IMG/VR virus record: IMGVR_UViG_3300030019_000003
Span: 62,001 to 126,000 of that record
Strand: one strand, 5' to 3'
DNA: 64,000 nucleotides
Shown: positions 1-15,620 of the stretch, piece after piece
Layout of the letters: each line of letters opens with the position of its first letter
Position numbering within the stretch: position 1 is the first letter of the stretch
Notes under the pieces: generated by a model
Database searches by the model: none
What the model was told of the DNA's origin: nothing
Seen by the model: the letters and a program-made list of their open reading frames with translations, nothing else
Position numbers and translations under genes: made by a program

Positions 1-2748
1 TATACACCAGTAGTAGGCGATAAACTCTATACCGATACAGCTGAAGAATTTGAAGTAAAATCGTTTACAGCAAATGTCACTGTTGATCTTACAAATGTAA
101 TATCCGGGGCATGTGGTTCTGATTATACAATGTTATTAAAAAGTAATGGTGACCTGTATGCAGCTGGATCTAACATGTATGGTCAATTAGGTTTACCCGA
201 TACTATTGCTGGAGTAGAATATTTTACATTAGTAACAACGGGTGTTAAACAAGTAAGCGCTGGTCTCTATCATACTGTTATTGTTAAAAATGATGGTAAG
301 GTTTATGTTACAGGAAGAAATAACTTTGGGCAACTAGGGTTAGGAGATAATGTAGATAGGCACGGTTTTACAGAATTGAGTATTGGTAGCTTACTTACAG
401 TATTTGCTTTTGATAATCAAATAGCTGTATTAAGAACAACAGGTACCGTTGCAACATGTGGGTATAACATGGGTGGCGAGTGTGGTGTAGGTGACCTTAG
501 TAACAAGATGGCTCTTACGGAAACAAACCTAACAGGTATTACCTTTATTGTTGTAACAGGTAGTGGTATAGCATGTCTTGATGCTGCTGGTAATGGATAT
601 GTTACTGGATTAAACACACAGGGTATGTTAGGTACTGGAAATACTACTCCAACAACTACTTTTATTAAAACAAGTACTACAGGTTTATTAAACTTAAGCA
701 TAGGCTATACTCATGGGTTGTTTGTAAAAGCAGATGGTACAGTAGTAGTTGTAGGTTCAAATACTTATGGACAAATTGGTCAAGGCGTGTTACCTAGTTC
801 AAGTGCGCTATTAACATTACCTATTACTAATATTAAAAAAGCATTTGCCCCTAGATGGAGTAGTTTACTATTAGCTAATGACGGTAGTGTATATGCAGCT
901 GGATTTAATAACTTTGGTCAAACTGGCCTAGAAGTTACAACTGCTAATATTACAGCATTTACATTAACAGGATATAAAGCTTCTGATATCATAGCTGGTC
1001 CAAACCATACATTAGTTATTAAAGCAGACGGGTCAATACTTTTATTTGGACTAAATGCAAGTAACCAACTTGGTTTTAAATCAAGAGATATTAACAAGAT
1101 TTATATTAACACACCAAGTTTGTATTATCCGGATATGTATGTTACACCTGTTACTAACTTGGGACATGTACCTATTGGTGTACATCGTAAAGATGTTACT
1201 ATTATAGCAGAGCCAGTTGTTCAAAATACAGGTGATTCTGATTTTTCAGCTGTTAATGATTGTGTTATTTCAGAGTCTACTCGTAATGTGATAGACAGTA
1301 CATTACAATCAACGGCTAATAAGCTTTACATCAATAACCAGTATGTTGACTTAAAACTAGGTCAGCAACTTATAACTGAGAATAACGAAATTATTACCAT
1401 AGGTAATATTGGTAGTGATGGTTCTGATACTGCTATATCTGGTATCAAAAGTATTATAGGTGCTACTTCAGGTGTGTTTGCTATTAAAGAAAACTCTGAG
1501 CTTTGGTATATAGGTTTAAACATCTACGGTGAAGCTGGTGTTGGCCATAATAGTAATCTAACGGAATGGGCCTATTGTGGTATTAAAGTTAGTTCAATTG
1601 CTACAGGTAAAGGATTTACATTAGCCATTAGAGATACTGATGGAATGGTTCTTAGTGCAGGTATTAATGTTTATGGCCAATTAGGACTAGGTACCGTTAC
1701 TGATACTAATATCTGGAAAGAATCTAATTTTTATGCAACTCGTGTAGCTGCTGGTAATAACCATGCTTTAGCACTAGATCTACAAGGATTACTTTATGCT
1801 GTAGGTTTAAATAATCATGGACAACTTGGTATTAACTCATCTACTATTCTTAATAAGACCGTGTGGACAGCTTGTGTTCTTCCTCCTACTGTTTATACTG
1901 TAGCTGCTAGAATCTATTGTGGCGGTGATAGTTCTTACGTTATTAGAACAGATAGTGTGTTATATTCAGCCGGTAGAAATGATTATGGTCAATTAGGTAT
2001 TAACACTACTACGGATGCTTTGTCATTTACGAATACGAGTGTTAGTGCCCTAGATATGGCAGCAGGTGATTACCATATTGTTGTTATTAAGGTTAATAAT
2101 AAACTCTTTGGTTGTGGTCTTAATGATAAAGGGCAGTTAGGTATTGGTGTTGTTGGTAATAAGTCAGTACTCGTAGATTTAGGATTAACTGCTAGTAAAG
2201 TATTTTGTAATGCTAATGGTAGTTATATTAGAAAACTTGACGGTACATGGGCATACTCAGGTATTAATACGTATGGTCAATCTGGAAATGGGTTAACAGC
2301 TAATATCTTTACATGGTATACACCCGTTATTGTTCCTAAATATATTGCGTGCATGGGTTTGTCAACTATGGTTATTACTGAAGATGGCCTATTCTACGCC
2401 ACTGGTAATAACGATGCTGGTCAATTTGGTAAACCTGAAATAGATGTTACTTTAACATGGGTAAAGTTATCGGTAACTAAACCATTTTTAGGTATGTGCA
2501 AAACAGGTTACTGGATAGCTCCTAAAGTAACTATTGCAAGAATACCACAAGCAGTGTACCCTATTAGTAGAGTATCCTTTAATGGTGTAGTAGCAAGTGC
2601 TAAAGAGGGTACGTATAACACCCCAAATGTTACTGTTATTTTAGAAGATACAGAGTTTTCAAACTCTAGAACACTAACAACATCTGTCGATATTCCGTAC
2701 ACTAACAGAGTGTATAAAATATTAGGCACTGTTTCAAAAATAAGTTGA
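1..2748 (+). CDS. RCC1-repeat tail fibre / receptor-binding-like protein (5'-partial, two RCC1 propellers)
   Basis: Frame is open from base 1, so the true start lies upstream; many G-x-N-x-x-G-Q-L-G and AG-x-x-H repeats; tail-module context. Confidence 0.8.
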   Translation, partial: YTPVVGDKLYTDTAEEFEVKSFTANVTVDLTNVISGACGSDYTMLLKSNGDLYAAGSNMYGQLGLPDTIAGVEYFTLVTTGVKQVSAGLYHTVIVKNDGKVYVTGRNNFGQLGLGDNVDRHGFTELSIGSLLTVFAFDNQIAVLRTTGTVATCGYNMGGECGVGDLSNKMALTETNLTGITFIVVTGSGIACLDAAGNGYVTGLNTQGMLGTGNTTPTTTFIKTSTTGLLNLSIGYTHGLFVKADGTVVVVGSNTYGQIGQGVLPSSSALLTLPITNIKKAFAPRWSSLLLANDGSVYAAGFNNFGQTGLEVTTANITAFTLTGYKASDIIAGPNHTLVIKADGSILLFGLNASNQLGFKSRDINKIYINTPSLYYPDMYVTPVTNLGHVPIGVHRKDVTIIAEPVVQNTGDSDFSAVNDCVISESTRNVIDSTLQSTANKLYINNQYVDLKLGQQLITENNEIITIGNIGSDGSDTAISGIKSIIGATSGVFAIKENSELWYIGLNIYGEAGVGHNSNLTEWAYCGIKVSSIATGKGFTLAIRDTDGMVLSAGINVYGQLGLGTVTDTNIWKESNFYATRVAAGNNHALALDLQGLLYAVGLNNHGQLGINSSTILNKTVWTACVLPPTVYTVAARIYCGGDSSYVIRTDSVLYSAGRNDYGQLGINTTTDALSFTNTSVSALDMAAGDYHIVVIKVNNKLFGCGLNDKGQLGIGVVGNKSVLVDLGLTASKVFCNANGSYIRKLDGTWAYSGINTYGQSGNGLTANIFTWYTPVIVPKYIACMGLSTMVITEDGLFYATGNNDAGQFGKPEIDVTLTWVKLSVTKPFLGMCKTGYWIAPKVTIARIPQAVYPISRVSFNGVVASAKEGTYNTPNVTVILEDTEFSNSRTLTTSVDIPYTNRVYKILGTVSKIS

Positions 2749-2756
2749 GGTGATAA

Positions 2757-5700
2757 ATGGTTACTGAACCAGTATTTGTAATAAAAAATGAAGATGCCGA
2801 AGCAGGCATCGCTTTAAAAATAAACCCGGATGCTGTTAGACCTGTTTATACCTTACCTCCGGAGACAGGTATTCTTATAACAAAAGAATCTGTAGTTGCA
2901 AATGTTAATTCTCTTGTAGATGCTAATGAAAAAGAATTAGTATCTATTACTAAACCGGTGATTCTTTCACCGGTCAGTGGTAAAGAATATAATCAAACAG
3001 GAATTCATTCTACACAGTATGCATGTAGTGATACCTATCTTGGTAAGCATACTGCTAGTGATTGGGAAGTGGCTACAGACTTTGATTTTAATAATATTGA
3101 AGTTAGTAGCTATAAAGATAGTTTAAATAAAACAACTTTCTTATTTACAGCAAAACAGCATCAAGCTACTTACTACGCTAGAGTACGTTATCGTTCCGAT
3201 AACTTCTTAAGTGCGTGGTCAAGTGTGGCTAGATTTACTTCATCTTCTACATTCATAGGTAATCCTGTGCTAACAGTATCAGGTGATCAAAATGCTGCAA
3301 GTGTTAAACCTACTTTTTATGGTTCAGCTTTTGAAACCTATAATACTACGGATACACATCAAGGTAGTATGTGGGTTGTGAGTACTGATGCTGAGTTTAA
3401 AAATGTAGTTTATTCATCAGGTATTAGTACTACTAATCTATTATCATTAGAGTATCCAAACACATTACTTCCAGATGCTACCTATTATGCTAGGGTTATG
3501 TATTTTGGAGATACTTTAAACAGTTCATGGTCAGATACTATGGTACTTAAAGTAGGCGTTATGATGGATACACCTATCCTTGTAGCAAACGGATATGTTT
3601 ATGAAGGTGGATCTATTGATATTAATATTATTAATTATGATTCAGCTGCTAAATACGATATTTATACAACAGCAGGTGAGTATGTTCGTAATAATGATAT
3701 TGTGACTATCAAGGTTCCTAATAATCTTGTTATTGGTACTGAAGTTGGTGTTACTGTCAACATCATATGCTCTAATGCAACGACAGGAAAGATAGATAGC
3801 TTTCCAGGAGTGTGTAATTTTACTATTTTGAATTATCATACTACTGTAGATCAAAGTATCAGGATAGACGACTCTAACTTTAATTCCTTAGTTTCTAGTA
3901 AATCTACATTATGGATGAATCTAGATACAAATTTGTTCGGTATTAATAATAATATTAAAGATAGCAGTCACGTCTCTACTATTTCAAAATTTTATATCAA
4001 TAATAAAATTTGTGATATCAAAGCAGGTGAAATACTTACTTGTGAGACAGGCGAAACATTCGCAGTTAAGACTGTAGAAGATGACGGCGCCGTTGCAAGT
4101 ATTTATGATATTGTGAAAATAGTATCCGGAATGGGTCATGTTCTGTTATTAACTGCTAATGGTGATGTTTATGCAGCTGGTAAAAATGATAAAGGTCAGT
4201 TAGGTCTAGGTGATAAAATTGATAGACCTAATTTTGTAAGAACCTTTAGAGATGCTAAAGACATTGGTGCTGGCTATTATCATTCTATTGTTCATACAGT
4301 ATTTGGGAATATAAAGTTATCAGGTTATAATATCTACGGCCAATTGGGTAATAGCAGCATATCGGATAGCGTTGTCTGGATTGGGCCAGCTGATGCAATG
4401 CCGACAGTAAAATCATTTAGTGCCGGATTATATCATACTGCCATCATACTAGATGATGGTTTAGGTACATTAATGGTAGCTGGAGGTAATACTGATGGTC
4501 AGCTATGTTCTTTTGTGTCCACAGGTGGTTATAGCGCTACATTTGTTAAGATAACCACAGGTATTGATAAAGTAGTTTCCGGACAGTACCATGTAGCATG
4601 TAAGACAACAGATGGTTATTATGCTGGTTTCGGTAGAAACTTGGAATATCAATTAGGTATGAACATTACTGGTAACAGAATGGTGTTTACTAAATCAACA
4701 ACACATATTAACGATGTGTGGGCTAGTTCAAACTCTACTTATATTACAGATGCTAATGGTGTTCTTTATTGTGCGGGGTTAAATGCTGATGGTCAACTTG
4801 GCACTAACGATCTTATTAATAAGAATGTTTTTGTAACAACGAATCTTATTGTTGATAAAGTCTATCCACAAATGTATGGTGTTATTATTAAAACAATAGA
4901 TGGTATCTTTAAGGCTACTGGTAGAAATACTAGCGGTGAGCTGTTAATAGGTACTAAAGTATCTACTCAGGTATTTACAAATGTTACTGAGAAAGCTTTG
5001 GATGTTATTGGTATTAACGGATATTCCAATCTATTAGTTACAAAAACAGATAAGCATATGTACGGTATCGGTCTTAATAGTAGTTCACAATTTGGTAATA
5101 ACTCTACGCTACCATTGATATCTTTAACAGATATTTATGATAAAACTGTATACGGTTTGTATAAACCAGTATATTGGGTAACACTTGAAACTAACGCAAC
5201 AGTTGTACCAGATCATTTTTATAGATCTGTCGTGCAAACTAATATGACAGATATTATTCAAAATACCGAAGATGATGATTTTGAAAAGATATCTACTATT
5301 ACTACTACGGAGCCGCTAACCAATATTTTAAATACTATGTTGCAGTCTACTGCTGATAAGATATATATTTCTGATTTACTTAGTAATGTCAAATCTGGTA
5401 ACAAGTTACTAATTAATGATGGCACCGTTATAACTGTAGATACTGTTTCCGATGACGGTTCTATAGTAAATATCCCAACAATTTCTAAAATGATTTCATA
5501 TTCAAATCTAGGAACCTATGTTGTGATGTTGGAAGATGGATCAGTTTACACATGTGGTAGCAACTGGTATGGTTCCGCGGGAACAGGAAATATAGTAAAT
5601 AGCGCAGGGTGGAATAAACTTAGCATCATAGCTTCAGATATTTTTAATGCGATAAGCGGTGTGTTTGTTGTGCGCAAAAATGATGGAAAAGTATTTGCTT

Positions 5701-6800
5701 TTGGTGGGAATGGCGCAGGTCAACTTGGTGTAGGTAACACAACAGCAGCTATCACAACTTTAACAGAATGTGTTGGTATTACCAATCCAACATACATGAC
5801 TGGGTCAGGCTCTCATAGTGTAGCTATAGGACAAGACGGTAGACTATATTCAACTGGTTATAATACAGTTGGGCAACTTTGTTTAAATAACACCATTGAT
5901 ACAACGGTATTTACACCTACTAGCTATGTTGTAAAAGCCGTAGCATGTTCCTATGATAATACTTTGTTTATATCGATTGCAAATGAGTTAATGTTCGTTG
6001 GTAGGAATGCGAATGGCCAGGCTGGGTTAGGGAATACGATTGCTAAGACTACCCCTACGTTTACTAATATTTACGCAACTGATGTTAAGTGCGTTGGAGA
6101 GCTTTTTGTTATTAAAAAACTGGATGGGTTACTTTATTATGCTGGGTTGTTTGGATATCTTCTTAATGCTCTTCCCGGCACTATTGTAACTACATACACG
6201 CAGATATCAGGGTTATCGGATATAGTTTCTTTTGAAGTAAATGAGTCATCTGTATACGCCATTAATACAGAAGGTTATCTTTATACTTTTGGAAATAATC
6301 TACTTGGAAAACTTTGTTTGGGTACAACTAGTGATGTACTAGACGGGTTTCACTCTACTGGGTACAAATGTAAATTTTATAGTGTTGGTAGTTTTGGCGC
6401 TACTTTATTCTTAACTACTGGTAAAATCATTGGGTTTGGGTACAGATTTGATTATAACAGAGGTGATAACAGAATGTACCCAGCTGGCACACCTATCACA
6501 CTTGATTATGCTTATCCATTAGGTGGATCTTATAAAGTTAATAAATGGATAACCGTTAAAGAAACACTTGCAAATGTTCCAACGGCTATTTATCCATTAG
6601 CTAACATCTATTTTAACGGAATAGAAGCTATACCTAATACGGGTATAATAAATAATGGTGTTGCTAGTGTTTGGCATGACGATATAGAGTTACCTTTATG
6701 TCGATCTATTGAAACAAAAGTAGAGAGACAACAAAGCGCCTTAGTTACATTGATTACAGCGAATCTAGAAAAAATAGGTTCAAAAGTTACGGTTAGTTAG
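2757..6800 (+). CDS. Large tail fibre-like protein: Fn3/Ig-like modules plus two RCC1 propellers
   Basis: SD GAGGTG upstream; HTASDWEVATDFDF and YYARVRY...SAWS Fn3-like motifs; two blocks of GxNxxGQLG repeats. Confidence 0.8.
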   Translation: MVTEPVFVIKNEDAEAGIALKINPDAVRPVYTLPPETGILITKESVVANVNSLVDANEKELVSITKPVILSPVSGKEYNQTGIHSTQYACSDTYLGKHTASDWEVATDFDFNNIEVSSYKDSLNKTTFLFTAKQHQATYYARVRYRSDNFLSAWSSVARFTSSSTFIGNPVLTVSGDQNAASVKPTFYGSAFETYNTTDTHQGSMWVVSTDAEFKNVVYSSGISTTNLLSLEYPNTLLPDATYYARVMYFGDTLNSSWSDTMVLKVGVMMDTPILVANGYVYEGGSIDINIINYDSAAKYDIYTTAGEYVRNNDIVTIKVPNNLVIGTEVGVTVNIICSNATTGKIDSFPGVCNFTILNYHTTVDQSIRIDDSNFNSLVSSKSTLWMNLDTNLFGINNNIKDSSHVSTISKFYINNKICDIKAGEILTCETGETFAVKTVEDDGAVASIYDIVKIVSGMGHVLLLTANGDVYAAGKNDKGQLGLGDKIDRPNFVRTFRDAKDIGAGYYHSIVHTVFGNIKLSGYNIYGQLGNSSISDSVVWIGPADAMPTVKSFSAGLYHTAIILDDGLGTLMVAGGNTDGQLCSFVSTGGYSATFVKITTGIDKVVSGQYHVACKTTDGYYAGFGRNLEYQLGMNITGNRMVFTKSTTHINDVWASSNSTYITDANGVLYCAGLNADGQLGTNDLINKNVFVTTNLIVDKVYPQMYGVIIKTIDGIFKATGRNTSGELLIGTKVSTQVFTNVTEKALDVIGINGYSNLLVTKTDKHMYGIGLNSSSQFGNNSTLPLISLTDIYDKTVYGLYKPVYWVTLETNATVVPDHFYRSVVQTNMTDIIQNTEDDDFEKISTITTTEPLTNILNTMLQSTADKIYISDLLSNVKSGNKLLINDGTVITVDTVSDDGSIVNIPTISKMISYSNLGTYVVMLEDGSVYTCGSNWYGSAGTGNIVNSAGWNKLSIIASDIFNAISGVFVVRKNDGKVFAFGGNGAGQLGVGNTTAAITTLTECVGITNPTYMTGSGSHSVAIGQDGRLYSTGYNTVGQLCLNNTIDTTVFTPTSYVVKAVACSYDNTLFISIANELMFVGRNANGQAGLGNTIAKTTPTFTNIYATDVKCVGELFVIKKLDGLLYYAGLFGYLLNALPGTIVTTYTQISGLSDIVSFEVNESSVYAINTEGYLYTFGNNLLGKLCLGTTSDVLDGFHSTGYKCKFYSVGSFGATLFLTTGKIIGFGYRFDYNRGDNRMYPAGTPITLDYAYPLGGSYKVNKWITVKETLANVPTAIYPLANIYFNGIEAIPNTGIINNGVASVWHDDIELPLCRSIETKVERQQSALVTLITANLEKIGSKVTVS

Positions 6801-6818
6801 GGGATTAAACCCCTAGCT
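6795..6818 (+). terminator. Stem-loop overlapping stop codon
   Basis: AGTTAGGGG-ATTAAA-CCCCTAGCT followed by ATTTT. Confidence 0.55.
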
Positions 6819-6876
6819 ATTTTAATGACAAATAATGATTAAGCTGATTAAAAATTTTAAACATTAGGAATATATC

Positions 6877-7290
6877 ATGGGATATGAAAAAAAGATTGAA
6901 CAGAATGGTGCTTTAGCCACAGTTGTCTATGAGAACAGCAATGGTGTTAGGGTTAGCAAGAGTAAGGGTGAGATTAGAAATGCTCTTGTAGCGGCTGGAA
7001 TTGATCCTGAGGACGTATTAGCAGACATCTCGAATAGTCTTTCACTCATGATCTCATTAACATCTAGAATGTACGGCGTTATGCCGGAAGAACAAAAAGC
7101 AAATTTGTTACCTGCTGATAGAACTCTTATTGAATATGTCTTTAAGAAACATCTAGAGACAAATACAACAGCAGATCTTAAGTTGTCAAGTGAAGGTACT
7201 ACTATGATTGATAACATCTTCACACGCTGGTCAACCATCACGAACATTGTAAACAGTATTAAAAAGTTTGTAACAACTGTTACTAAATAG
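6877..7290 (+). CDS. Hypothetical protein (possible fibre chaperone/assembly factor)
   Basis: 137-aa ORF with AGGA SD between fibre genes; function inferred from context only. Confidence 0.55.
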   Translation: MGYEKKIEQNGALATVVYENSNGVRVSKSKGEIRNALVAAGIDPEDVLADISNSLSLMISLTSRMYGVMPEEQKANLLPADRTLIEYVFKKHLETNTTADLKLSSEGTTMIDNIFTRWSTITNIVNSIKKFVTTVTK

Positions 7291-7307
7291 ACATCTTAAG
7301 ATTATGG

Positions 7308-7354
7308 ATATGATAGGACCATTGAGTCCTATCATATTCTATCCACTTTTTTTT
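7308..7354 (+). terminator. Stem-loop plus T-tract
   Basis: ATATGATAGGAC-CATTGA-GTCCTATCATAT, then T8 after a short spacer. Confidence 0.7.
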
Positions 7355-7366
7355 AAAGGTTAACCT

Positions 7367-7867
7367 ATGGAATTATTTACAGGGGCTGAACAAGAAATGG
7401 AGTGTTTAAAACTACCTGTTTCTATAGCTTTTAAACGTATTAACAAGAATAAACATGAAGAATTTGCCCATAAAGCAATTTGCTGGTGGACTAAGAGTGA
7501 ACTCTATCATGTTGAAATAGTAATTGGTGATATATGGATATCATCCACTGGTAAGGGTACTCATGTTGAAGCTCTTAAAGAGGATCTTAGTGATTGGAAC
7601 GTATTAGATATTGAGGATGTTGTGTTAACAAGAGAACAGTATAATAATGTGTTAGATTGGTTAAAAGATCATGAGCATATGAAATATGATTGGTTAGCTA
7701 TTGTTATGTCACAGTTTATACCTATAGGTATTCAAAGTGATAAACGTTGGTTCTGTTCAGAGATGGCTACACGTGTATTACAACTTCTAGGATATCCACA
7801 GGTACAAGATGTAGAAGCTTATAATGTATCACCTGGTTATCTGGGAATGTTATTTAATTATAAATAA
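7367..7867 (+). CDS. Permuted papain-like (YiiX/YaeF-type NlpC/P60) enzyme
   Basis: N-terminal YHVEI His motif, KYDW, and C-terminal RWFCSE catalytic Cys in the permuted order. Confidence 0.7.
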   Translation: MELFTGAEQEMECLKLPVSIAFKRINKNKHEEFAHKAICWWTKSELYHVEIVIGDIWISSTGKGTHVEALKEDLSDWNVLDIEDVVLTREQYNNVLDWLKDHEHMKYDWLAIVMSQFIPIGIQSDKRWFCSEMATRVLQLLGYPQVQDVEAYNVSPGYLGMLFNYK

Positions 7868-7916: not shown

Positions 7917-10900
7917 ATGAGTAAAGGACTAAAAATTAAGTCAGTAGGTGGCGGTAGTCTTACTATTAAACCTAGTGACAGTGCTGACGTAGTCATCACG
8001 TTACCAGAAAATGGTGGAGACTTAGCAGGAGAAAGTGATCTTACAGCGGGTATTGATGCTATTGTATCAACTACGGTTAGTAGTGTTGCCTTTATAGAAA
8101 AACCAGCTGTAACATCACCATTGTTAGACGCCATTGATTTTACAGGCGTGATAACAACAACACCTTTTAAGACTATCGGTAATTATAAGGGTCAACATTT
8201 ATCAACTGAATGGAAAATAGCATTAGATGCTAACTTTACCAATATGGTTTTAGATAGCACAGATATTATTAATCTTGAGGCTATAACAATAGCGGCAGGT
8301 ATAGGTGTAAAATACTTTATCAAATGTAGATATAATACTCCACTCTATGTTAGTGAATGGTCCGGCGTAGTTTCAGCTACTGGTAAAGGTATTATTATAG
8401 ATGCTCCAGTTTTGAATACTGTACCTATATCAGCTATTGATCAGAATGGATTTCCTTATAAAGATGTACGTTTTAGGGATATCTCAGGATACGGTTATAC
8501 TGAAAAAGATGGCGTGGCGCTAACTAGTTATGGTTTATATTTTATTTATGGAACATCTCTTGCTGATCTTAATACTAAGATAGCTGCATTTGATGCCGGG
8601 ACTGCAACATGGGAAAGTCTTAGTCCTGTCAATAATAACATGACGATAGTACCAAATAGTTATGTTAGTACGGTTATAACACCTGATTATAATCAAACAT
8701 TGTATGTTGCTGCTGGGTACACAGCTGTCTATGGAGCTTCTGCAGTATTGCATGGTAAATTCTCTTCACCTTTTACTATTACAGGATTGACACAACTAGT
8801 AGTTCCTGTTGTAGCAGGTGATTCAATTGGATATGAGTTTAATACATCTACATTGACAATAAGCAATTATTCTTCTAAAACAGATCTACAAGGGTATACC
8901 ATTAATGTAACTCTTGGATCAATCGTCAGAACAGGCAATACTTTAAAATGGTCACTCCCAGCTGTAACAGCAGATACTCAAGCGACTATAACTATCAGTA
9001 ATTATAGTTTAACTTCAGCTGTAGCGACAAGTCCTGTTTATAGTAAAACTATTACTGCTAAGAACGTCAATGGTACCATAACAACCAACTGGGTTGAAGA
9101 TGTTTATAGACTTAGATCAGGTAACCTTATTGCTAGAACAGCTGCTGATACACATAATGGTGCTACTGCAGGTGCTGCTATGGTTGATATTTTAAACCAT
9201 ACTAAAACATCTACTACCAGTACATTATATGTAGATGACAGAGGTTTTAAAATCAAATCAGGTGATATGCTTATTAATGAAATAGGCGATGAAGTTATTG
9301 TTGACACGGTTGTTGATGATGGTGTGAGAGAGTATGTTTTTGATAACACAACTTCTAAAATATATGCAGATAATACTCATGGTAATGCTGCAAGTACAGG
9401 ATGTGTTGTTAAGAGTGATGGGACACTATACTATGGTGCATTTACTAAGTATAACCCTAGTGTGCAGTTTAATGCTGAAGAAGGTAAAAAGTATCTTGAT
9501 GATACATGTAACTTTATTAAGTTACCTTTTAAAGCAAAGTATGTTTATTTTAATTCACATATAGCTGGATCAGGTTATGCTATTGATAGCACAGGTTGTT
9601 TATGGACTATAGGTAACACAGCTCCGTTTTTCTATGCCACAGGGTATACAACACCAACTATGAATACATGGAGAAAAACTCAAACGATCGTTATTGATTT
9701 CTACAACAGGTGGATTATTGGTAATGACAATAATATGTATGATGTGTTTGCTACTAATATTACAGCAATTGCTGTACGTGTTTGGAGAATCGTAAGAGGC
9801 TCAAATGCAGATTTACCTGTTATAGGGTGTATTAGTACAGAAGCAAATACATTATATGTAAAAGGTATTAATACCTATAGCCAGTTAGGTACAGGTAATA
9901 ATACAACAGCAGCAAATTTTGTAAGTACAGGACTAAGTGTAGTAGATGCTGTCTTCGTAGGAGATGAAAACAATATTTATGGTACCGTGTGTATTGAACA
10001 AACAACGAATCTCGTTAAAGTAGCCGGTACTAACTCATTATTTCAATTTGGTGCGTTATTAGCGACCAGTACTACGTATTTAAACTTTACATCATTAGGT
10101 ATACACGCTACCCATTTATATTATCTTATTTATGGCCATGCTTTACAAACTGTTTCAAATGGTTTATACATATCTCCTAACGCAATAGATCCTGTAAACG
10201 CTACCTATAATTCTACCATAGGCTGGAAAACAACGGCATTAGCGTGTACTGATTTGAATTCATACGCTGCGTTAATGAGCGACGGATATTGGTATGCTAA
10301 CGATAGCTCCAGAGATGGTTGCTGGTATGGTAAAGGTGACTCAAGAGCTAACTATAAAATAACTCCTAACGCAAACTTCACTACGCCAACAGGGGTATTC
10401 GGTAGAATAAGTGATTTAAATCCTTATAAGCCTAACTTATATGTAACATCTAAAACACCTTACTTCGCAGCAGTTCCTAAACGTTTATTTGTAGCAGACA
10501 CACAGTTCAACATCTATGTTGATAAACATACAAATACTGCTACCAATATTAAACAGATTGGTTGTTCTTATTCTGAACTGTATATGAATATTCTTTATAA
10601 ATATCCGCTTACAGTAACGAATACTAATACCACAACTAGCTTTAGGGTGAATGGTAAAGAGATTGATGTTAATGTAGGGGATAGAGTTGTAGATGTCAAT
10701 GGTAACATACGTAATGTTGCGGCTGTTTCTAAATCAACTTTGACAAAACAACCTTTTTGTCCATCAATAGGTCAAAACATAATAACCTCCACAGATTTTA
10801 ATTCTTTCATATCTGCAAGTGATAAAACTTATGAGTTTAAAACAAATGGCTACTATGATGAAGGATCTGTAGAAGGTATATCTCCTTATCCATTAGTGTT

Positions 10901-12116
10901 TAAGAAAATAATGAAAAATCAGTACGTTACATTGGCACTTACTACGGATGGTGTCTTATACGGTAAGGGTTCAAATATGCAGGGTGGACTAGGTGCCGGG
11001 CCATATTCATTAACCTATACTAATTTCACACCACTTGGTATGACTGATGTCGTAGATTTCTGTTTAAGTTACACTTCCACATTTGTACTTAAATGGGACG
11101 GGACTGTTTATGTAACAGGTGGTAATGATAATGGTGAATTAGGTATTAATGCTATTGATGAATATGGCGATACCGTGACAGTATACGGGTTCACACCTAT
11201 AAGTATTAAAGCAACAGCTATAGCCGCAGGGTATAATAACTTTGCTATGATAGGAACAGCTGGCGATGTTTATGTTGCCGGATCAAATCAATATAATGCT
11301 TTTTTAAATAGTGGTTTTGCAAACGGCAATGATGATAATCATCCCGCATTAACACTGCTACCATTTAAAGCAACAGCTATAGCATTAAGCAGGCATAACC
11401 TAGTGATGATAAACCAAAGTGGTTTTTTAGTCGGCACAGGCGTTGGTAAATATCTTGGGGTTGGTTCTACAGAAGGGTATAGTTCTAATATAACTACTAG
11501 TATTAAACCTAAATATATAGTAGCGGGCGAGAGTTGTACTGGGTATATTACAGATACTGATGACTTTTACGTATCTGGCAGTAATACCGCCGGTGCTATT
11601 ATAAATACTAATATATGTGATACCGTTACTATACTATCTACATATACATTAGTGGCATCTGGTATTAAAACTATTAATATTAATGGTTATAACATGTTTG
11701 CTGCTAGTTATACTGGAGAAATTATAGGATCTGGTACCAATGGTTCAAAACTTCTAGGTAACACTGGACCATCTACGTCACAGCCATTTAAAAGAATAAC
11801 AAACTCTCTTACGGATCCTGATAGTAATCTTACAGCGAAATTTAATTATCGTGATAAGTATTACAGTGTTTATACGATTACGGTTGATACACCATTCCCT
11901 AGTATACCAACTTCATTGCACATCTTACCGAAGATGGAAATAGAAGGTATCGTGGATACAGTTAGTATAACAGGTGCCGTTACTAGTTCTGGTGTTGTTA
12001 CTTCAACATTTGCTACTACCGAATTTTCTCCAGTTGAGGCTGCTAGATTATTCTTTAGAACGCATCGTAAAGCAGCAATTACAAGTTTAAATTGTTCTTT
12101 CTATACAGTAAGTTAG
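7917..12116 (+). CDS. Large tail fibre-like protein with Fn3/Ig modules and two propeller regions (second clearly RCC1-like)
   Basis: GQHLSTEWKIALDANF module shared with neighbours; GGNDNGELG, GSNMQGGLG and GINTYSQLG repeats. Confidence 0.75.
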   Translation: MSKGLKIKSVGGGSLTIKPSDSADVVITLPENGGDLAGESDLTAGIDAIVSTTVSSVAFIEKPAVTSPLLDAIDFTGVITTTPFKTIGNYKGQHLSTEWKIALDANFTNMVLDSTDIINLEAITIAAGIGVKYFIKCRYNTPLYVSEWSGVVSATGKGIIIDAPVLNTVPISAIDQNGFPYKDVRFRDISGYGYTEKDGVALTSYGLYFIYGTSLADLNTKIAAFDAGTATWESLSPVNNNMTIVPNSYVSTVITPDYNQTLYVAAGYTAVYGASAVLHGKFSSPFTITGLTQLVVPVVAGDSIGYEFNTSTLTISNYSSKTDLQGYTINVTLGSIVRTGNTLKWSLPAVTADTQATITISNYSLTSAVATSPVYSKTITAKNVNGTITTNWVEDVYRLRSGNLIARTAADTHNGATAGAAMVDILNHTKTSTTSTLYVDDRGFKIKSGDMLINEIGDEVIVDTVVDDGVREYVFDNTTSKIYADNTHGNAASTGCVVKSDGTLYYGAFTKYNPSVQFNAEEGKKYLDDTCNFIKLPFKAKYVYFNSHIAGSGYAIDSTGCLWTIGNTAPFFYATGYTTPTMNTWRKTQTIVIDFYNRWIIGNDNNMYDVFATNITAIAVRVWRIVRGSNADLPVIGCISTEANTLYVKGINTYSQLGTGNNTTAANFVSTGLSVVDAVFVGDENNIYGTVCIEQTTNLVKVAGTNSLFQFGALLATSTTYLNFTSLGIHATHLYYLIYGHALQTVSNGLYISPNAIDPVNATYNSTIGWKTTALACTDLNSYAALMSDGYWYANDSSRDGCWYGKGDSRANYKITPNANFTTPTGVFGRISDLNPYKPNLYVTSKTPYFAAVPKRLFVADTQFNIYVDKHTNTATNIKQIGCSYSELYMNILYKYPLTVTNTNTTTSFRVNGKEIDVNVGDRVVDVNGNIRNVAAVSKSTLTKQPFCPSIGQNIITSTDFNSFISASDKTYEFKTNGYYDEGSVEGISPYPLVFKKIMKNQYVTLALTTDGVLYGKGSNMQGGLGAGPYSLTYTNFTPLGMTDVVDFCLSYTSTFVLKWDGTVYVTGGNDNGELGINAIDEYGDTVTVYGFTPISIKATAIAAGYNNFAMIGTAGDVYVAGSNQYNAFLNSGFANGNDDNHPALTLLPFKATAIALSRHNLVMINQSGFLVGTGVGKYLGVGSTEGYSSNITTSIKPKYIVAGESCTGYITDTDDFYVSGSNTAGAIINTNICDTVTILSTYTLVASGIKTININGYNMFAASYTGEIIGSGTNGSKLLGNTGPSTSQPFKRITNSLTDPDSNLTAKFNYRDKYYSVYTITVDTPFPSIPTSLHILPKMEIEGIVDTVSITGAVTSSGVVTSTFATTEFSPVEAARLFFRTHRKAAITSLNCSFYTVS

Positions 12117-12134
12117 CGGGGTAATTCCCCGCTA
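12114..12134 (+). terminator. Stem-loop overlapping stop codon
   Basis: TAGCGGGG-TAATT-CCCCGCTA. Confidence 0.5.
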
Positions 12135-12151
12135 TAATTTAAGGATCATAT

Positions 12152-13750
12152 ATGCAAATAAAAACAAATGGAAACATTTCAAACATCAATATCGGATCTA
12201 TTCCAGATGATAGAGAGATCATTTTTAGCTCAAGTTCGATATCTCCTATTACTAAAAGTACTTTGGGTATTAAACTTAGTGGTTTAACTATAAAGAATAC
12301 TGTGGTGACTTCTCCTATTTCACAACCAGAGATTATTGATTCTGAGAAATTAGGATATGTATCTACATCTTCTTATGCTGTGAGCGACGGTTTTGTAGAA
12401 CCCCATGTTAGTACAAGTTGGATCATTAGTTCTACATTAGATAAAGCAACTGCTGGAAATGGTGATATCGCCAATGTTGCTAAATCAACAAGTTATTTAA
12501 CAGATTTTCCTAATAGTTTATTAAACTATGGTGGCACGTATTTTGTTAAAGCAAAACATCATAGTGCGAGTTATGACTCCGATTGGTCTATTGTTAAAGA
12601 AGTTAGTATTACTGATAAGTATATACAAACACCAACCATAACACTTGTTGATTCTAACATACTCGCGGCAACTCTCTCACCAGTTTTAACAATTACGGCA
12701 TTTAGAGCTGAAGGATTTACAGATACTCTTAAGGCTATTACTGTATTAGTAAGTGAAGATAGTAACTTTACATATGGCGTACCTTATACGGTAACAACAC
12801 CAACGATTACCTTAGAAGCATTAACACCTGGTACTGAGTATTTTGTTAAAGCAAAAATGCTTGGAGAGACACTAGAATCTGAATGGTCAGATGTTATTAG
12901 TTTTACAACAATGTTTAAAACAGAGAAGCCAGTTATAACAGGTGATACATCAGGATATGAAAACAACGTAGTTGTTATTACGATTACTAATTATAACCCT
13001 GAATTGTTATATTCTATATCTTTAACAGGTGGAACCAGTGAACAAGATGGTGATAAGATAAATTGGAAGTTACCTGTTGTTAATACTACAATCGATACCT
13101 ATACTGAAACACATACTTTACAAGTTGTAGCTTTGAATCTCAAAGATTCATTAGGCTTAAGCGATATTACAAGTCATGATGTGCTGGTAATGAATATTCC
13201 TGCCAGTGTAGACTATTTGTTTAATTATCCTACAGTTATGGTAAATGGATTTCATTCTGCTGTTTCAGGTATGAATAAATTTATAACAACAAAAACGATT
13301 GATCAACCAGAAAGTGATACTCCATTTGTTTCTGTTAGAGATATTATCTGTGTCGAAAATGCTGTTACGATACTTGATCCGTTACGTAGAAGTTTTGGGC
13401 CTACGACTATTTTTAACTATAATGAAAGTGTCTATATTCCTAAAGCAGGTGATATTCTCTTTACAGATACGAGTGCAATGTTATACGTTCTAAGTGTTGA
13501 TATTGAGAATAAAACATTTACAGTTAACAATGAGGTGGCAGTTTACAGTAAGATATTTAAACCTGCTAGTATGAATATAGGTATAGATACAGCTACTATA
13601 GTAAGAGCTTCTTATGTTGATGGTTTATTACAAACTTACTATGGTGAACTTGTAGTAGAAGAGACGTACTCATTAACACTTATTGTCGAGACATTAACTG
13701 GAAACACTGTTATGAATGTTTCTGGATCAATTTGTAAGAAGGCGGTGTAA
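12152..13750 (+). CDS. Fn3/Ig-like virion protein, paralog of neighbouring fibres, lacking RCC1 repeats
   Basis: HVSTSWIIS, YFVKAK...SDWS, PVITGDTSGYE motifs shared with 2757, 7917 and 13752. Confidence 0.7.
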   Translation: MQIKTNGNISNINIGSIPDDREIIFSSSSISPITKSTLGIKLSGLTIKNTVVTSPISQPEIIDSEKLGYVSTSSYAVSDGFVEPHVSTSWIISSTLDKATAGNGDIANVAKSTSYLTDFPNSLLNYGGTYFVKAKHHSASYDSDWSIVKEVSITDKYIQTPTITLVDSNILAATLSPVLTITAFRAEGFTDTLKAITVLVSEDSNFTYGVPYTVTTPTITLEALTPGTEYFVKAKMLGETLESEWSDVISFTTMFKTEKPVITGDTSGYENNVVVITITNYNPELLYSISLTGGTSEQDGDKINWKLPVVNTTIDTYTETHTLQVVALNLKDSLGLSDITSHDVLVMNIPASVDYLFNYPTVMVNGFHSAVSGMNKFITTKTIDQPESDTPFVSVRDIICVENAVTILDPLRRSFGPTTIFNYNESVYIPKAGDILFTDTSAMLYVLSVDIENKTFTVNNEVAVYSKIFKPASMNIGIDTATIVRASYVDGLLQTYYGELVVEETYSLTLIVETLTGNTVMNVSGSICKKAV

Positions 13751-13751
13751 T

Positions 13752-15620
13752 ATGGGTAACATACTCTTATACGGAGATAATAATAAAAACACTACAACTA
13801 TTATTGTTCCAGCAGCAGGCGGGGATTATATATTCCCAACTACTAATTTAGTATCAGAAGATTCTGCTGCTTTAGAAGTAGTGAAACGAACAAATGATGT
13901 TTTAGTAAAAGTAGGTGGAATATCTAAACCAAGTATCATAACTCCCCTTGTTGGTATATTAGGATTTACAGGTTATGTAAAAACTGATGATTTTAGTTTA
14001 ACAGGATCTTATAAAGGTCAACATGTTAATACTGATTGGGAGTTAGGTTTAGATCCAGATTTTGTAAATCTTATGGATAGTAGTTATAACAATGCTACTG
14101 ATTTAACGGCACATACATTTAAAATAACAGATCCAAGTTATAAAGTATATGTAAGATGTAGATTTAGATCTGGTACATATACCAGTGATTGGTCTGATAC
14201 TGTTCAAGTCACAACGGTGAATGCCTATATTGCTACTCCTGCTTTAACAGCAACGGATACCAGTGATGCTAGTAATCATTTGTTTACTATTAACGGAACA
14301 GTATTCGCACCTGTTAACGTTGATATGGAAGCTCATATTAAAACACGATGGGTTGTTAGTTTAGACAGTGATTTTAAAACAACTCTGTATGATGTTAAAA
14401 CAACAGATTTAGTATCAACTGTTTTAGGTAAAACAGGATCTATTAATATTGAACTTCTTAGAGGTAAGACTTACTATGTCAAATGTAAATACATGGGTGA
14501 ATTTTATAACAGCGGGTGGTCTAATACGGTAATTATTTCTGTAAAGGCTATAACAATTGCCCCAGTTGTAACAGGTCCAGCCTATGGCGTAGAGGGTACT
14601 ACGGTTAATGTTATTATTAACAATTTTAATCCTAACTATAAGTATACGGTATTAAAACAAACAGGTAGCTACGTTATAGACAGCGGAGTCATTAGTTATA
14701 CTTTACCCTATGTTGACAATGATACTGACATTACTTTATCTGTTATTGCAGAAGATGTTATAGCAGGTAGTTTAGAATCACCACATACTGATTTTAAAAT
14801 CAGAGTTCTTAATAGAGCTTTTGTAGCTGATACTAGTTTAGTATTTGATCCTACCACGTTCTCTACAGCTATTGGTAAAACAAATATGAGTTTTGTTACT
14901 AGTGGTATGACGTTTAACAAGAATATTAATATTTTCAATAATCATCTTGTTTCTTCTAAAGATGTTATTTGGATTAACAATAAACTTATTAATCTTAAAC
15001 CAGGTGATATTCTTATAGATGATTTAAAAAATGAGATTATTGTTGGCACTGTTAAGTTTGCTGGTGATTATATCAATACTAATGGTGGGTATTATGGAAC
15101 CTATTGGATAGTTCCTGCTATACCTATAGATAGAGTTCCGTTAACACTTTATTTAAAGCATGGTCGAGCTGTGAGTAATATCGCTATGCAAAGTATTACA
15201 GAAAAAGACTTTGTAGGCTTTGGGTCATTTACCGTAACTGAATCAACCAGTAACGCATTGGTTTCAGTATCAGATGATAGAAAAACATTAACGTTAAATA
15301 TTCAACCTTTTGTGGATATGGTATTGCATACTAATCTTGATACTTATTTAGTAGCTACTACTAACGATGTTGATGGTAAGGTAACATTAAATGATCCGTT
15401 AGACCAGGGCGTTACTGTTATTAATGCATTAACATCAGTGGTCATTAATAATGAGTCTGCGACACCTCTAAGTTCTACTTATAGTAATGATGGTTTAACT
15501 ATGACAACTACATTTGCTGCGGGTGAGCTTATTAGTACACGAACACTTCTTGTTGAGTTTGAAGTTCCTAACAATCATACTCTTGAGATTGTTAATATTC
15601 CTATTACTAAACAAGGGTAA
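13752..15620 (+). CDS. Fn3/Ig-like virion protein, paralog of neighbouring fibres, lacking RCC1 repeats
   Basis: Start moved to ATG 13752 (AAGGCGG upstream); GQHVNTDWELGLDPDF, YVRCRF...SDWS motifs. Confidence 0.7.
   Translation: MGNILLYGDNNKNTTTIIVPAAGGDYIFPTTNLVSEDSAALEVVKRTNDVLVKVGGISKPSIITPLVGILGFTGYVKTDDFSLTGSYKGQHVNTDWELGLDPDFVNLMDSSYNNATDLTAHTFKITDPSYKVYVRCRFRSGTYTSDWSDTVQVTTVNAYIATPALTATDTSDASNHLFTINGTVFAPVNVDMEAHIKTRWVVSLDSDFKTTLYDVKTTDLVSTVLGKTGSINIELLRGKTYYVKCKYMGEFYNSGWSNTVIISVKAITIAPVVTGPAYGVEGTTVNVIINNFNPNYKYTVLKQTGSYVIDSGVISYTLPYVDNDTDITLSVIAEDVIAGSLESPHTDFKIRVLNRAFVADTSLVFDPTTFSTAIGKTNMSFVTSGMTFNKNINIFNNHLVSSKDVIWINNKLINLKPGDILIDDLKNEIIVGTVKFAGDYINTNGGYYGTYWIVPAIPIDRVPLTLYLKHGRAVSNIAMQSITEKDFVGFGSFTVTESTSNALVSVSDDRKTLTLNIQPFVDMVLHTNLDTYLVATTNDVDGKVTLNDPLDQGVTVINALTSVVINNESATPLSSTYSNDGLTMTTTFAAGELISTRTLLVEFEVPNNHTLEIVNIPITKQG

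What the first reader, a model, noticed from the sequence alone, without database searches (positions are those of the whole stretch)
1..15620. RCC1 propellers inserted as cassettes into one loop of a repeated carrier domain
Seen: each propeller is preceded by a motif like STxxKLYINNxxxDxKxGxxLIxxxxxxxxVxTVxDDG and followed by YKxxYWxxxxxxxxxPxxxY. Examples: STANKLYINN...SDG / KTGYWIAPK; STISKFYINN...DDG / YKPVYWV; STADKIYIS...DDG / YKVNKWI; STTSTLYVDD...DDG / YKPNLYV; TTTSFRVNG... / YSVYTITV. In ORF 13752 the two halves are joined with only about 10 residues between them (SSKDVIWINNKLINLKPGDILIDDLKNEIIVGTVKFAG-DYINTNGG-YYGTYWIVP), and ORF 12152 has another empty version. Inference: a modular fibre system with filled and empty sockets for about six divergent propeller heads, possibly a host-range diversification device.
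Basis: partly seen in the sequence, partly recalled or inferred. Interest (0 to 1): 0.65.

Follow-up and report, generated by a model that had tools for sequence, protein, structure and literature searches.

The report
Propeller heads plugged into fibre barrels
A giant phage from peat carries a row of fibre genes in which a small barrel domain has one loop that is either short or holds a whole RCC1-type propeller; relatives fill different sockets, so this looks like an undescribed plug-in scaffold for likely host-binding heads.

Summary
Six tandem paralogues share a ~380-aa N-terminal module followed by one to two "carrier" units. These are U, just upstream of the window, and A–E at window 1–15620. 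Seven units hold a ~350-aa RCC1-like propeller between their halves. Two (U2, E1) have only about 10 residues there. D is a doubtful third.

A profile built only from the filled copies matches the empty copies as one contiguous stretch (E 1e-10 to 1e-12). An exhaustive profile search found about 30 further family members. In these the gap between the halves is bimodal: 0–10 aa or 260–390 aa.

AlphaFold2 models the empty unit at pLDDT 95.6. Both halves align as one small six-stranded β-barrel, closest to the K1-lyase "rider" / P22 I-domain / EF-Tu domain 2 type (Z 4–6). No Pfam, NCBIfam, PHROG or PDB family covers it.

In a syntenic relative the carriers are positional orthologues, yet the orthologous propeller sits in the other socket.

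There is no reverse transcriptase, no flanking DNA repeat and no population variation. The modularity is therefore evolutionary, not a programmed switch. Fibre and receptor-binding roles are inferred, not shown.

The parts
1..2748 (+). Gene A, C-terminal 915 of 1313 aa (it starts 1193 bases upstream of the window). Layout in window coordinates:
- Unit A1: end of N-half 1-69, propeller 70-1122, C-half 1123-1203.
- Unit A2: N-half 1285-1422, propeller 1423-2493, C-half 2494-2583.
- C-terminal (Ct) domain 2602-2742.
   Evidence: ORF and translation. Pfam WD40_RLD 341 bits, RCC1_2 and RCC1 above their cut-offs. Half-domain HMM coordinates.
2757..6800 (+). Gene B (1347 aa). Layout in window coordinates:
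- N-module 2757-3932.
- Unit B1: N-half 3948-4088, propeller 4089-5159, C-half 5160-5243.
- Linker.
- Unit B2: N-half 5319-5459, propeller 5460-6527, C-half 6528-6617.
- Ct domain 6639-6776.
   Evidence: The halves of B2 are predicted to associate: ipSAE 0.60 against control 0.01, rated weak support.
6877..7867 (+). Two small genes (137 aa at 6877-7290 and 166 aa at 7367-7867) that follow the third fibre gene in all three related phages. Their role is unknown and they are not shown to belong to the system.
   Evidence: Synteny in L007 (135 and 178 aa) and in L010/L011 (142 and 180 aa). The second gene hits phrog_1128 at E 9e-27.
7917..12116 (+). Gene C (1399 aa). Layout in window coordinates:
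- N-module 7917-9167.
- Unit C1: N-half 9183-9323, degenerate propeller 9324-10424, C-half 10425-10511.
- Unit C2: N-half 10617-10733, propeller 10734-11855, C-half 11856-11942.
- Ct domain 11970-12110.
   Evidence: The C1 propeller is recognised only by the family propeller HMM (E 1e-11).
12152..13750 (+). Gene D (532 aa): N-module plus a doubtful, degenerate empty unit (N-half-like stretch at 13403-13498) and a C-terminal tail.
   Evidence: The N-module is homologous to that of A (E 1e-29). The carrier N-half is weak.
13716..15620 (+). Gene E (634 aa; the database start is at 13752). Layout in window coordinates:
- N-module.
- Empty unit E1: N-half 14925-15059, 10-residue socket loop 15060-15089, C-half 15090-15155.
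- Probable second degenerate unit with C-half and Ct domain at 15378-15605.
   Evidence: (i-E 3e-12 over both halves).

Best explanation
Gene layout. These are six tandemly duplicated, bead-on-a-string fibre proteins of a 252-kb jumbo phage that has its own multisubunit RNA polymerase. Each protein has:
- a short N-terminal anchor;
- two FN3-like domains and an Ig-like domain;
- one or two 'carrier' units;
- a ~50-aa C-terminal domain.

The carrier. It is a ~80-aa six-stranded beta-barrel. The hairpin between its long fourth strand (ending in the ..V..DDG motif) and its fifth strand (the Y..YW[IV].P motif) is a permissive loop. That loop is either 0-10 residues long, or it carries a complete RCC1-like propeller of about seven blades (~350 aa). 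A propeller's two ends lie side by side, so it can be plugged into a hairpin without disturbing the barrel.

Likely function. The barrels act as rigid pedestals along the fibre, and the propellers are the exposed, fast-diverging ligand-binding heads. They most probably bind host-surface receptors. The phage displays seven different propellers on four proteins, plus head-less versions.

How the states change. Over evolutionary time sockets are filled, emptied and re-used, by ordinary recombination, duplication and deletion. The propeller's own repeated blades probably help deletion. Whole units and whole genes are also duplicated.

Shown here: the nested architecture, the homology of filled and empty units, the barrel fold of the empty unit, and the change of socket between orthologues.
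Inferred: the fold of the filled state, virion location, receptor binding, and the mechanism of gain and loss.
For: The halves are one domain:
- The filled-only HMM matches empties U2 and E1 contiguously.
- In the 48-row alignment of units, every insert falls at the same column.
- AF2 of U 836-983 gives mean pLDDT 95.6 and pTM 0.88.
- VIA-align matches model residues 10-89 to single barrels. The best are 7w1c_A 141-230 (Z 6.3, rmsd 1.9, 67 aa), the phage Chi tail tip 8vjh_B (Z 6.0), and EF-Tu domain 2 entries (Z 4-5).
- 7w1c 141-230 is the 'rider' barrel of the K1 lyase, which its authors liken to the P22 coat I-domain (PMC8822698).
- The split halves of filled unit B2 score ipSAE 0.60 against a best control of 0.01. 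The runs agree in at least 88% of contacts and the partner pLDDT is at least 72. At 0.60 or below, the mark was reached by 7 of 80 solved complexes and 2 of 110 mismatched pairs, so the tool calls this weak support.

The family is wider than this genome:
- The exhaustive profile search gave 44 hits at E<=1e-3, of which about 30 are true members.
- In 45 paired units, the gap between halves is 0-10 aa in 11, 261-388 aa in 30, 560-589 aa in 2 and 68 or 114 aa in 2.

Sockets change state:
- The syntenic array in L007 holds orthologues P0012, P0013 and P0015. The N-module tree pairs U+P0012 at 97/98, A+P0013 at 100/100 and B+P0015 at 97/95.
- U is filled-empty, whereas P0012 is empty-filled.
- The carriers pair by position in pairwise scores (U1N-X1N 108 vs 58, U2N-X2N 70 vs 54, U1C-X1C 42 vs 21, U2C-X2C 53 vs 40).
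- They also pair by position in the carrier tree (85/84 and 83/77; forcing the alternative costs 10.4 lnL, p-AU 0.053).
- The two propellers are sisters (SH-aLRT 99, path 1.81). This is comparable to the orthologous pairs A1 (1.50), A2 (1.36) and B1 (1.42).

Fibre context:
- The FN3-like part is 33-43% identical to annotated tail-fibre proteins of Nitratiruptor phages.
- Two upstream paralogues hit phrog_17517, 'tail protein'.
- Relative P0017 carries a PHROG tail-fibre N-terminus (phrog_8147, E 1.7e-8).

Phage type: phrog_3015 (RNA polymerase beta) at E 1e-136; direct terminal repeats and CheckV completeness 100%.
Against: - No coordinates could be inspected. The one-barrel reading of the empty unit therefore rests on aligned ranges and confidence values.
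- The filled state rests on homology and on a weakly rated complex prediction.
- In the full-length model of U, which used only 6 sequences, the filled carrier had pLDDT of only 48-64.
- The structural matches (Z 4-6) lie in the range the tool calls common for small barrels, so homology to any known barrel is not established.
- There is no experimental or proteomic evidence that these proteins are in the virion or bind a host. The host is unknown.
- The socket change between U and P0012 can also be explained by duplicating the propeller into both sockets and then losing it reciprocally. P0016 is filled-filled, and P0021 and P0017 carry sister propellers in two sockets.
- Support for positional orthology of the carriers is moderate, not decisive (p-AU 0.053).
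Confidence: 0.75

Rival explanations
1. The flanking motifs are two independent linker or cap elements that always accompany an RCC1 propeller (for example strands that close the propeller). The 'empty' versions are deletion scars with no fold of their own.
For: The motifs always bracket a propeller in the filled copies. The filled carrier was modelled with low confidence in the shallow full-length model.
Against: - Empty units are conserved across about 11 independent representatives with intact halves.
- The empty unit folds with pLDDT 95.6 and pTM 0.88.
- Residues 10-89 of the model align as one barrel.
- The isolated halves of a filled unit, without the propeller, are predicted to associate (0.60 vs 0.01, rated weak).
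Confidence: 0.05
2. The architecture is as described, but the sockets never exchange. Each filled or empty state arose only by loss from ancestors in which all sockets were filled, so 'cassette' is a misnomer.
For: - P0016, the first gene of the third phage's array, is filled-filled.
- Short inserts of one or two blades (P0033, P0052) and of five or six blades (P0024_c1, P0021_c2) look like stages of erosion.
- No DNA repeats lie at the borders.
- The propellers in this genome are old paralogues.
Against: - The propeller in socket 1 of U and the propeller in socket 2 of P0012 are sisters at an orthologue-like distance. Pure loss would therefore need a recent copy of one propeller in both sockets, and that is itself a filling event.
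- P0021 and P0017 show exactly such sister propellers in two sockets of one protein.
Confidence: 0.15
3. The proteins are not virion fibres. They are intracellular or secreted RCC1-repeat effectors, for example involved in DNA organisation as once suggested for the RCC1 proteins of phage phAPEC6.
For: PHROGs label the RCC1 families as 'regulator of chromosome condensation' under DNA metabolism. PMC7247149 speculates on a DNA-ordering role. No sheath or baseplate-J gene was found nearby by Pfam.
Against: - The FN3/Ig bead architecture.
- Similarity of the N-module to annotated tail fibres.
- A recognised tail-fibre N-terminus in relative P0017.
- Neighbouring 'tail protein' paralogues.
- Tandem expansion with fast-diverging heads, which is typical of adhesins.
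- The PHROG label is only a name transfer from eukaryotic RCC1.
Confidence: 0.08

Closest known systems
'Evolved' Dit, Tal and other adhesion-device proteins of siphophages with carbohydrate-binding modules inserted into loops (e.g. PMC6669499, PMC10688798, PMC7533335)
   Same: A structural tail protein has a permissive loop that is short in 'classical' versions and carries a whole binding module in 'evolved' versions. Occupancy differs between related phages and is linked to adsorption.
   Different: - The host domain here is a small six-stranded barrel repeated in series within a fibre, not the Dit galectin domain of a baseplate hub.
- The guest is a ~350-aa RCC1-like propeller, not a CBM.
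- No sequence relation was found. The VIA match to T5 Dit pb9 is only Z 4.3.
K1-lyase 'rider' domain (7w1c) / P22 coat I-domain / EF-Tu domain 2-type six-stranded beta-barrels
   Same: This is the best structural match of the carrier (Z 6.3, rmsd 1.9 over 67 residues, 21% identity). It is a small barrel used as an accessory domain in phage structural proteins (PMC8822698).
   Different: In those proteins the barrel is itself the inserted guest, sitting in a beta-helix turn or in the HK97 fold. Here the barrel is the host of an insertion and is a serial module. No sequence similarity was found, and Z lies in the range of common folds.
RCC1-repeat proteins of phages (phiCD211/LIBA2945-type Clostridioides phages, SP-15, Jenst, S-SRM01, phAPEC6; phrog_7220, 4219 and 16766)
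   Same: They have the same kind of propeller (tblastn 26-28% identity, E down to 7e-20; PHROG E 1e-112), often next to tail-fibre genes.
   Different: The 1627-aa LIBA2945 protein has tandem propellers but no carrier halves; all domain E-values were above 0.1. None of these proteins was described with a socket domain.
Endosialidase of phage K1F (recalled from memory: a beta-barrel domain nested inside a six-bladed propeller)
   Same: It is a phage tail protein that combines a propeller and a small barrel by nesting one in the other.
   Different: The topology is the reverse: there the barrel sits inside the propeller. The propeller type also differs (sialidase, catalytic). This comparison was not tested here.

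Membership tests
RCC1-like beta-propeller (Pfam RCC1 PF00415, RCC1_2 PF13540, WD40_RLD PF25390) | Scores above Pfam gathering cut-offs, with ~50-aa blades carrying the G.N..GQLG-type motif, about seven per propeller | tested here: met
   - A and B: WD40_RLD 341 and 225 bits (cut-off 150), and RCC1/RCC1_2 well above their cut-offs.
- C2: RCC1 25.6 bits and RCC1_2 23.2 bits, just above the cut-offs.
- Motif period is 48-50 aa, with 4-7 motifs per 350 aa.
- C1 is the exception. It has no Pfam hit, and only the family propeller HMM recognises it (E 1e-11).
RCC1-like beta-propeller | Guanine-nucleotide exchange or chromatin binding, as in eukaryotic RCC1 | not testable with these tools
   This is not expected for a phage fibre. 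The name is a fold label only.
Phage tail fibre / receptor-binding protein | A recognised virion-attachment N-terminus and location in the tail module | tested here: inconclusive
   - No Pfam, PHROG or NCBIfam family hits the N-module of U.
- It is 33-43% identical over ~100 aa to annotated Nitratiruptor phage tail fibres.
- Relative P0017 has a PHROG tail-fibre N-terminus.
- Upstream paralogues hit phrog_17517, 'tail protein'.
- Sheath and baseplate J were not found by Pfam.
Phage tail fibre / receptor-binding protein | Presence in virions and binding to a host receptor | not testable with these tools
   The genome is uncultured, from peat metagenomes.
Evolved Dit-type loop insertion | The host domain is a Dit (N-terminal ring domain plus galectin-like domain) of a siphophage baseplate | tested here: not met
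   There is no sequence match. The structural match to T5 pb9 is only Z 4.3, over the barrel alone. The architecture is a serial fibre, not a hub. It works like this family but is not a member.
Diversity-generating retroelement target | A reverse transcriptase and a template/variable repeat pair | tested here: not met
   No RVT_1 match was found in the complete genome. No long repeats occur in the 20-kb array.
Invertible or shufflon-type tail-fibre switching | Inverted repeats flanking the alternative segments, plus a site-specific recombinase | tested here: not met
   Only short, imperfect inverted repeats were found (at most 33 nt, 75-89% complementary), and they are not at cassette borders. 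All genes lie on one strand. A recombinase was not searched for specifically.
P22 I-domain / K1-lyase rider / EF-Tu domain 2 barrel | A six-stranded closed beta-barrel of this topology, with detectable homology | tested here: inconclusive
   Fold resemblance is Z 6.3-4. Foldseek found nothing at E<=1e-3 in PDB or BFVD. There is no sequence similarity.

The most novel reading that the evidence does not exclude
The barrel is a general plug-and-play socket. Across a whole clade of phages, propeller heads would be moved between sockets, between paralogous fibres and between phages, using the conserved barrel-coding flanks as recombination arms. Socket occupancy and head identity would then be a main determinant of host range. 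Nested further insertions (glycine-rich modules inside the propellers) would add a second level of modularity.
Probability: 0.25. Interest if true: 0.75.

Novelty: new variant of a known kind. Interest (0 to 1): 0.6.

Why it matters
Phage host range is set by the tips of tail proteins, and swapping such tips is how nature and laboratories retarget phages. This finding adds a natural scaffold with three useful properties:
- It has a defined, repeatedly used insertion loop.
- It tolerates both a ~350-aa guest domain and no guest at all.
- It occurs up to three times per protein and in several paralogues per genome.

It assigns a structural context and a plausible role to the many phage genes now labelled 'regulator of chromosome condensation'. 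It also defines a domain family that is missing from Pfam, NCBIfam, PHROGs and the PDB.

Comparing filled and empty states among orthologues gives a clean system for studying how nested domain architectures are gained and lost.

Tried and rejected
- Near-identical DNA search in the phage collection: nothing found.
With protein B alone it found only a second assembly of the same phage (L005, 100% identity).
- Word search with E: only three distant relatives, which share the N-module alone.
- Full-length AF2 of U with six sequences: too uncertain around the filled carrier to be useful. No coordinates are available from the tool, so contacts could not be read.
- Foldseek against PDB and BFVD, the ESM Atlas shape and feature searches, and the PDB sequence-profile search: nothing significant for the carrier unit.
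- Hypothesis that the Clostridioides phage RCC1 proteins share the carrier: rejected.
- About ten hits of the big search (P0032, P0034-36, P0042-46, P0048) are tail-fibre proteins with 22-aa tandem repeats. They match only the first strand of the N-half. They were treated as spurious and left out of all alignments and trees.
- Correlation between carrier identity and propeller identity within this genome: none (rho -0.01). All copies are about equally old, so the test is uninformative.
- DGR, invertible-segment and population-variation explanations: not supported.
- Literature searches for RCC1 in phage fibres: most hits were strain or locus names beginning 'RCC1'. Only the phAPEC6 paper was relevant.
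- Complex prediction: passed its mark, but the tool rates the pass as weak. It is cited only with its control.

Full report
**What is there**

The window is bases 62001-126000 of a single 252,159-bp virus record.
- The record has direct terminal repeats, and CheckV rates it 100% complete.
- GC content is about 0.34, and almost every gene lies on the + strand.
- A gene upstream matches the phage multisubunit RNA polymerase beta family phrog_3015 at E 1e-136. This points to a phiKZ/AR9-like jumbo phage.
- Pfam models for tail sheath and baseplate J found nothing.
- The DNA occurs in many peat metagenomes.

The flagged region belongs to an array of six tandem paralogues.

| Gene | Position | Length |
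|---|---|---|
| U | genome 57783-60734, just upstream of the window | 983 aa |
| A | genome 60807-64748; window 1-2748 is its C-terminal 915 aa | 1313 aa |
| B | window 2757-6800 | 1347 aa |
| C | window 7917-12116 | 1399 aa |
| D | window 12152-13750 | 532 aa |
| E | window 13716-15620; the database start is at 13752 | 634 aa |

All six share an N-terminal module of about 380 aa (phmmer E 1e-22 to 1e-43 against A). In relatives this module gives faint FN3, PhoD_N and Ig_Rha78A_N hits.

**Checking the observation**

- In the seven filled units the N-side and C-side anchors are 385-410 residues apart. These units are U1, A1, A2, B1, B2, C1 and C2.
- In U2, E1 and D the anchors are 42-47 residues apart.

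I built an HMM from the concatenated halves of the seven filled copies only. It matched the empty copies as single contiguous stretches covering both halves: E 403-481 at i-E 3e-12 and U 842-923 at i-E 4.5e-10. Nothing else in the genome scored better than E 0.02. The filled and empty versions are therefore homologous over both halves.

D is the exception. Only its N-half is recognisable, and only weakly.

E seems to contain a second, degenerate unit followed by the family's C-terminal domain (hhalign E 2.6e-4).

Pfam confirms RCC1-type propellers in A1, A2, B1, B2 and C2. C1 is degenerate and is recognised only by the family's own propeller HMM (E 1e-11).

**The family outside this genome**

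I made a profile from unaltered pieces of the carrier, namely the empty units, the N-halves and the C-halves (alignment A3). I searched it exhaustively against 1.84 billion representative proteins.
- It gave 44 hits at E<=1e-3 and 24 at E<=1e-10.
- About ten hits are unrelated tail-fibre proteins with 22-aa repeats and were set aside.
- About thirty are true members.

Parsing all members with iterated half-domain HMMs gave 45 units with both halves. The gap between the halves was:
- 0-10 aa in 11 units;
- 261-388 aa in 30 units;
- 560-589 aa in 2 units, whose propellers carry a glycine-rich secondary insertion;
- 68 and 114 aa in 2 units, which hold only one or two blades.

In a 48-row alignment of units the insert always falls at the same position. 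It lies between the ..V..DDG end of the N-half and the Y..YW[IV].P start of the C-half.

The unit occurs behind at least two unrelated kinds of N-terminus. One of them, in P0017, matches PHROG tail-fibre N-terminal families (phrog_8147, E 1.7e-8).

No Pfam, NCBIfam or PHROG family and no PDB sequence matches the carrier unit.

**Structure**

The shallow full-length model of U was mediocre, with mean pLDDT 68. It did show the same strand pattern in the filled and the empty unit, with a low-confidence socket loop.

With the 48-row alignment, the empty unit plus C-terminal domain (U 836-983) was modelled at mean pLDDT 95.6 and pTM 0.88.

Foldseek found nothing significant in the PDB or in BFVD.

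The exhaustive VIA-align search aligned model residues 10-89, which span both halves, to single small beta-barrels:
- the 'rider' domain of the Klebsiella phage K1 lyase, 7w1c_A 141-230 (Z 6.3, rmsd 1.9, 67 residues, 21% identity);
- the phage Chi tail tip (Z 6.0);
- the JBD30 baseplate, the phi92 and Acinetobacter phage tailspikes, lambda gpJ and T5 Dit (Z 4.2-4.7);
- many EF-Tu domain 2 entries (Z 4-5).

The K1-lyase authors describe the rider as a barrel of two three-stranded sheets resembling the P22 coat I-domain (PMC8822698).

These Z values lie in the range the tool calls common. I therefore claim the fold class, not homology.

No coordinates could be inspected, so I tested the filled state indirectly. 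The N-half of B2 (residues 847-905) and its C-half plus C-terminal domain (1254-1347) were folded as two chains without the propeller.
- They scored ipSAE 0.60 (runs 0.61, 0.52, 0.60) against a best control of 0.01.
- The runs agreed in at least 88% of contacts, and the partner pLDDT was at least 72.
- The tool rates such a pass as weak support.

The prior from the empty units was already high, so this is a modest addition.

It is established knowledge that the two ends of an RCC1-type propeller lie next to each other. That geometry is what a hairpin insertion needs.

**Do the inserts behave as cassettes?**

Within this genome there is no sign of it.
- The seven propellers are 24-33% identical to each other and the carriers 14-36%, with no correlation between the two. 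All units are therefore old duplicates.
- There are no long direct or inverted DNA repeats at the borders.
- There is no reverse transcriptase.
- Contigs from four peat samples are identical over gene B, with no joints. These are low-depth contigs, so rare variants could be missed.

Between genomes the picture differs. Two related phage contigs carry syntenic arrays:
- L007 holds P0012, P0013 and P0015, followed by two small genes.
- L010/L011 holds P0016, P0019 and P0018, followed by the same two small genes.

The N-module tree pairs U with P0012 (97/98), A with P0013 (100/100) and B with P0015 (97/95).

The first gene of the array is filled-empty in this phage (U), empty-filled in L007 (P0012) and filled-filled in L010 (P0016).

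The carriers of U and P0012 pair by position:
- In pairwise scores: 108 vs 58, 70 vs 54, 42 vs 21 and 53 vs 40.
- In a carrier tree: 85/84 and 83/77, with all second carriers forming one clade at 90/88.
- Forcing the carrier of U socket 1 to join that of P0012 socket 2 costs 10.4 log-likelihood units (p-AU 0.053).

Yet the propeller in socket 1 of U is sister to the propeller in socket 2 of P0012 (SH-aLRT 99, path length 1.81). That distance is like those of the plainly orthologous pairs (1.36-1.50).

Two readings fit. Either the propeller moved from one socket to the other, or it was first copied into both sockets and then lost reciprocally. The second path is plausible because P0021 and P0017 carry sister propellers in two sockets of one protein. 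Both readings require a socket to be filled and a socket to be cleanly emptied while the barrel survives.

Inserts of five, six, two and one blade look like stages of erosion through the propeller's own repeats. That is inference.

The C-D-E block is absent from the third phage's array, so gene number also varies.

**What it most likely does**

The bead-on-a-string make-up, the fibre-like relatives and neighbours, the tandem expansion and the fast divergence of the heads all fit virion fibres whose propellers bind host-surface ligands. The barrels would serve as pedestals. None of this is shown experimentally, and the host is unknown.

The alternative idea that phage RCC1 proteins organise DNA (PMC7247149) has no support here.

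**Comparison with what is known**

In principle this works like the 'evolved' Dit and Tal proteins of siphophages. There, binding modules sit in loops that are short in classical versions (PMC6669499, PMC10688798, PMC7533335).

It is not a member of that family. The host domain, the guest domain and the protein context all differ.

Barrels of the rider/I-domain kind are known in phage structural proteins as guests. Here the barrel is the host.

RCC1-repeat proteins are annotated in several phages, but the one examined (LIBA2945) lacks the carrier. The paper library holds no description of such a socket.

I therefore rate this a new variant of a known kind. It is an undescribed domain family and nested architecture, with direct comparative evidence that socket occupancy changes. 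It uses a known general strategy.

**Limits**

- No coordinates were available.
- Fold matches are moderate.
- Carrier trees rest on about 90 columns.
- Propeller alignments can slip by one blade.
- The relatives are metagenomic contigs of unknown host.
- Rows left out of the trees: the spurious repeat proteins, duplicates of the window's own proteins (P0001, P0011, P0023), and units lacking one half.

Noticed in passing
L007:10001-18308 (P0012 about residues 745-965; P0013 first propeller): Two orthologous propellers carry a further insertion of ~200-230 aa that is rich in glycine (Pfam Gly_rich_2, weak). It is an insertion inside the inserted domain, and it raises the gap between the carrier halves to 560-589 aa.
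   Followed up: partly
P0033, P0052, P0024 unit 1, P0021 unit 2 (proteins): Some sockets hold only one or two blades (68 or 114 aa), or five or six blade motifs (261 or 300 aa). They may be erosion intermediates, partial propellers that complete each other in an oligomer, or assembly artefacts.
   Followed up: partly
window 6877-7290 and 7367-7867: Two small genes (137 and 166 aa) follow the third fibre gene in all three related phages. The second hits phrog_1128, annotated as enoyl-CoA hydratase-like. Possibly they help fibre assembly; their function is unknown.
   Followed up: partly
window 7917-15620 compared with L010:18133-23993: The whole C-D-E block is missing from the third related phage. 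There the two small genes are followed directly by homologues of window 15687 onward. The number of fibre genes is therefore variable.
   Followed up: partly
L001:821-5883 (genome 44821-49886): Two more large ORFs (750 and 790 aa) share only the Ig-like piece of the N-module. They hit phrog_17517 'tail protein' and have different C-terminal parts, so the fibre cluster spans about 33 kb.
   Followed up: no
L001:8693-11441, and L007:5239-8425: Radical-SAM, QueC-like and methyltransferase-like genes sit between the fibre genes and are conserved in the relative. They may be a nucleotide or DNA modification pathway.
   Followed up: no
L009:11479-13536 (genome 35479-37536): A phage multisubunit RNA polymerase beta subunit (phrog_3015, E 1e-136) places the genome among phiKZ/AR9-like jumbo phages. 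Pfam sheath and baseplate-J models find nothing in the genome.
   Followed up: partly
P0032, P0034-36, P0042-46, P0048: Tail-fibre proteins with 9-14 tandem 22-aa repeats (of the type ..LTSS.A.LYV.NKY.Q..SGL) match the first strand region of the carrier N-half (ST..K.Y..N). This could be chance or a very old shared strand motif.
   Followed up: no
window 13716-13752: The longest ORF of E overlaps the end of D by 35 bases. The database protein starts at the ATG at 13752, two bases after D's stop codon, and that is the more likely start.
   Followed up: partly
internal linkers, e.g. window 5244-5318 (B) and 1204-1284 (A): The linker after an internal C-half carries the motif Q[DN].(2)D.[DN]F. 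It aligns with the first strands of the C-terminal domain that follows the last unit. The repeated unit is therefore larger than the barrel: barrel plus a partial copy of the C-terminal domain.
   Followed up: partly
window 15687-16364: The 225-aa ORF just after the array has a weak PHROG endolysin hit (phrog_315, E 1.6e-5). It is conserved after the array in the third phage.
   Followed up: no
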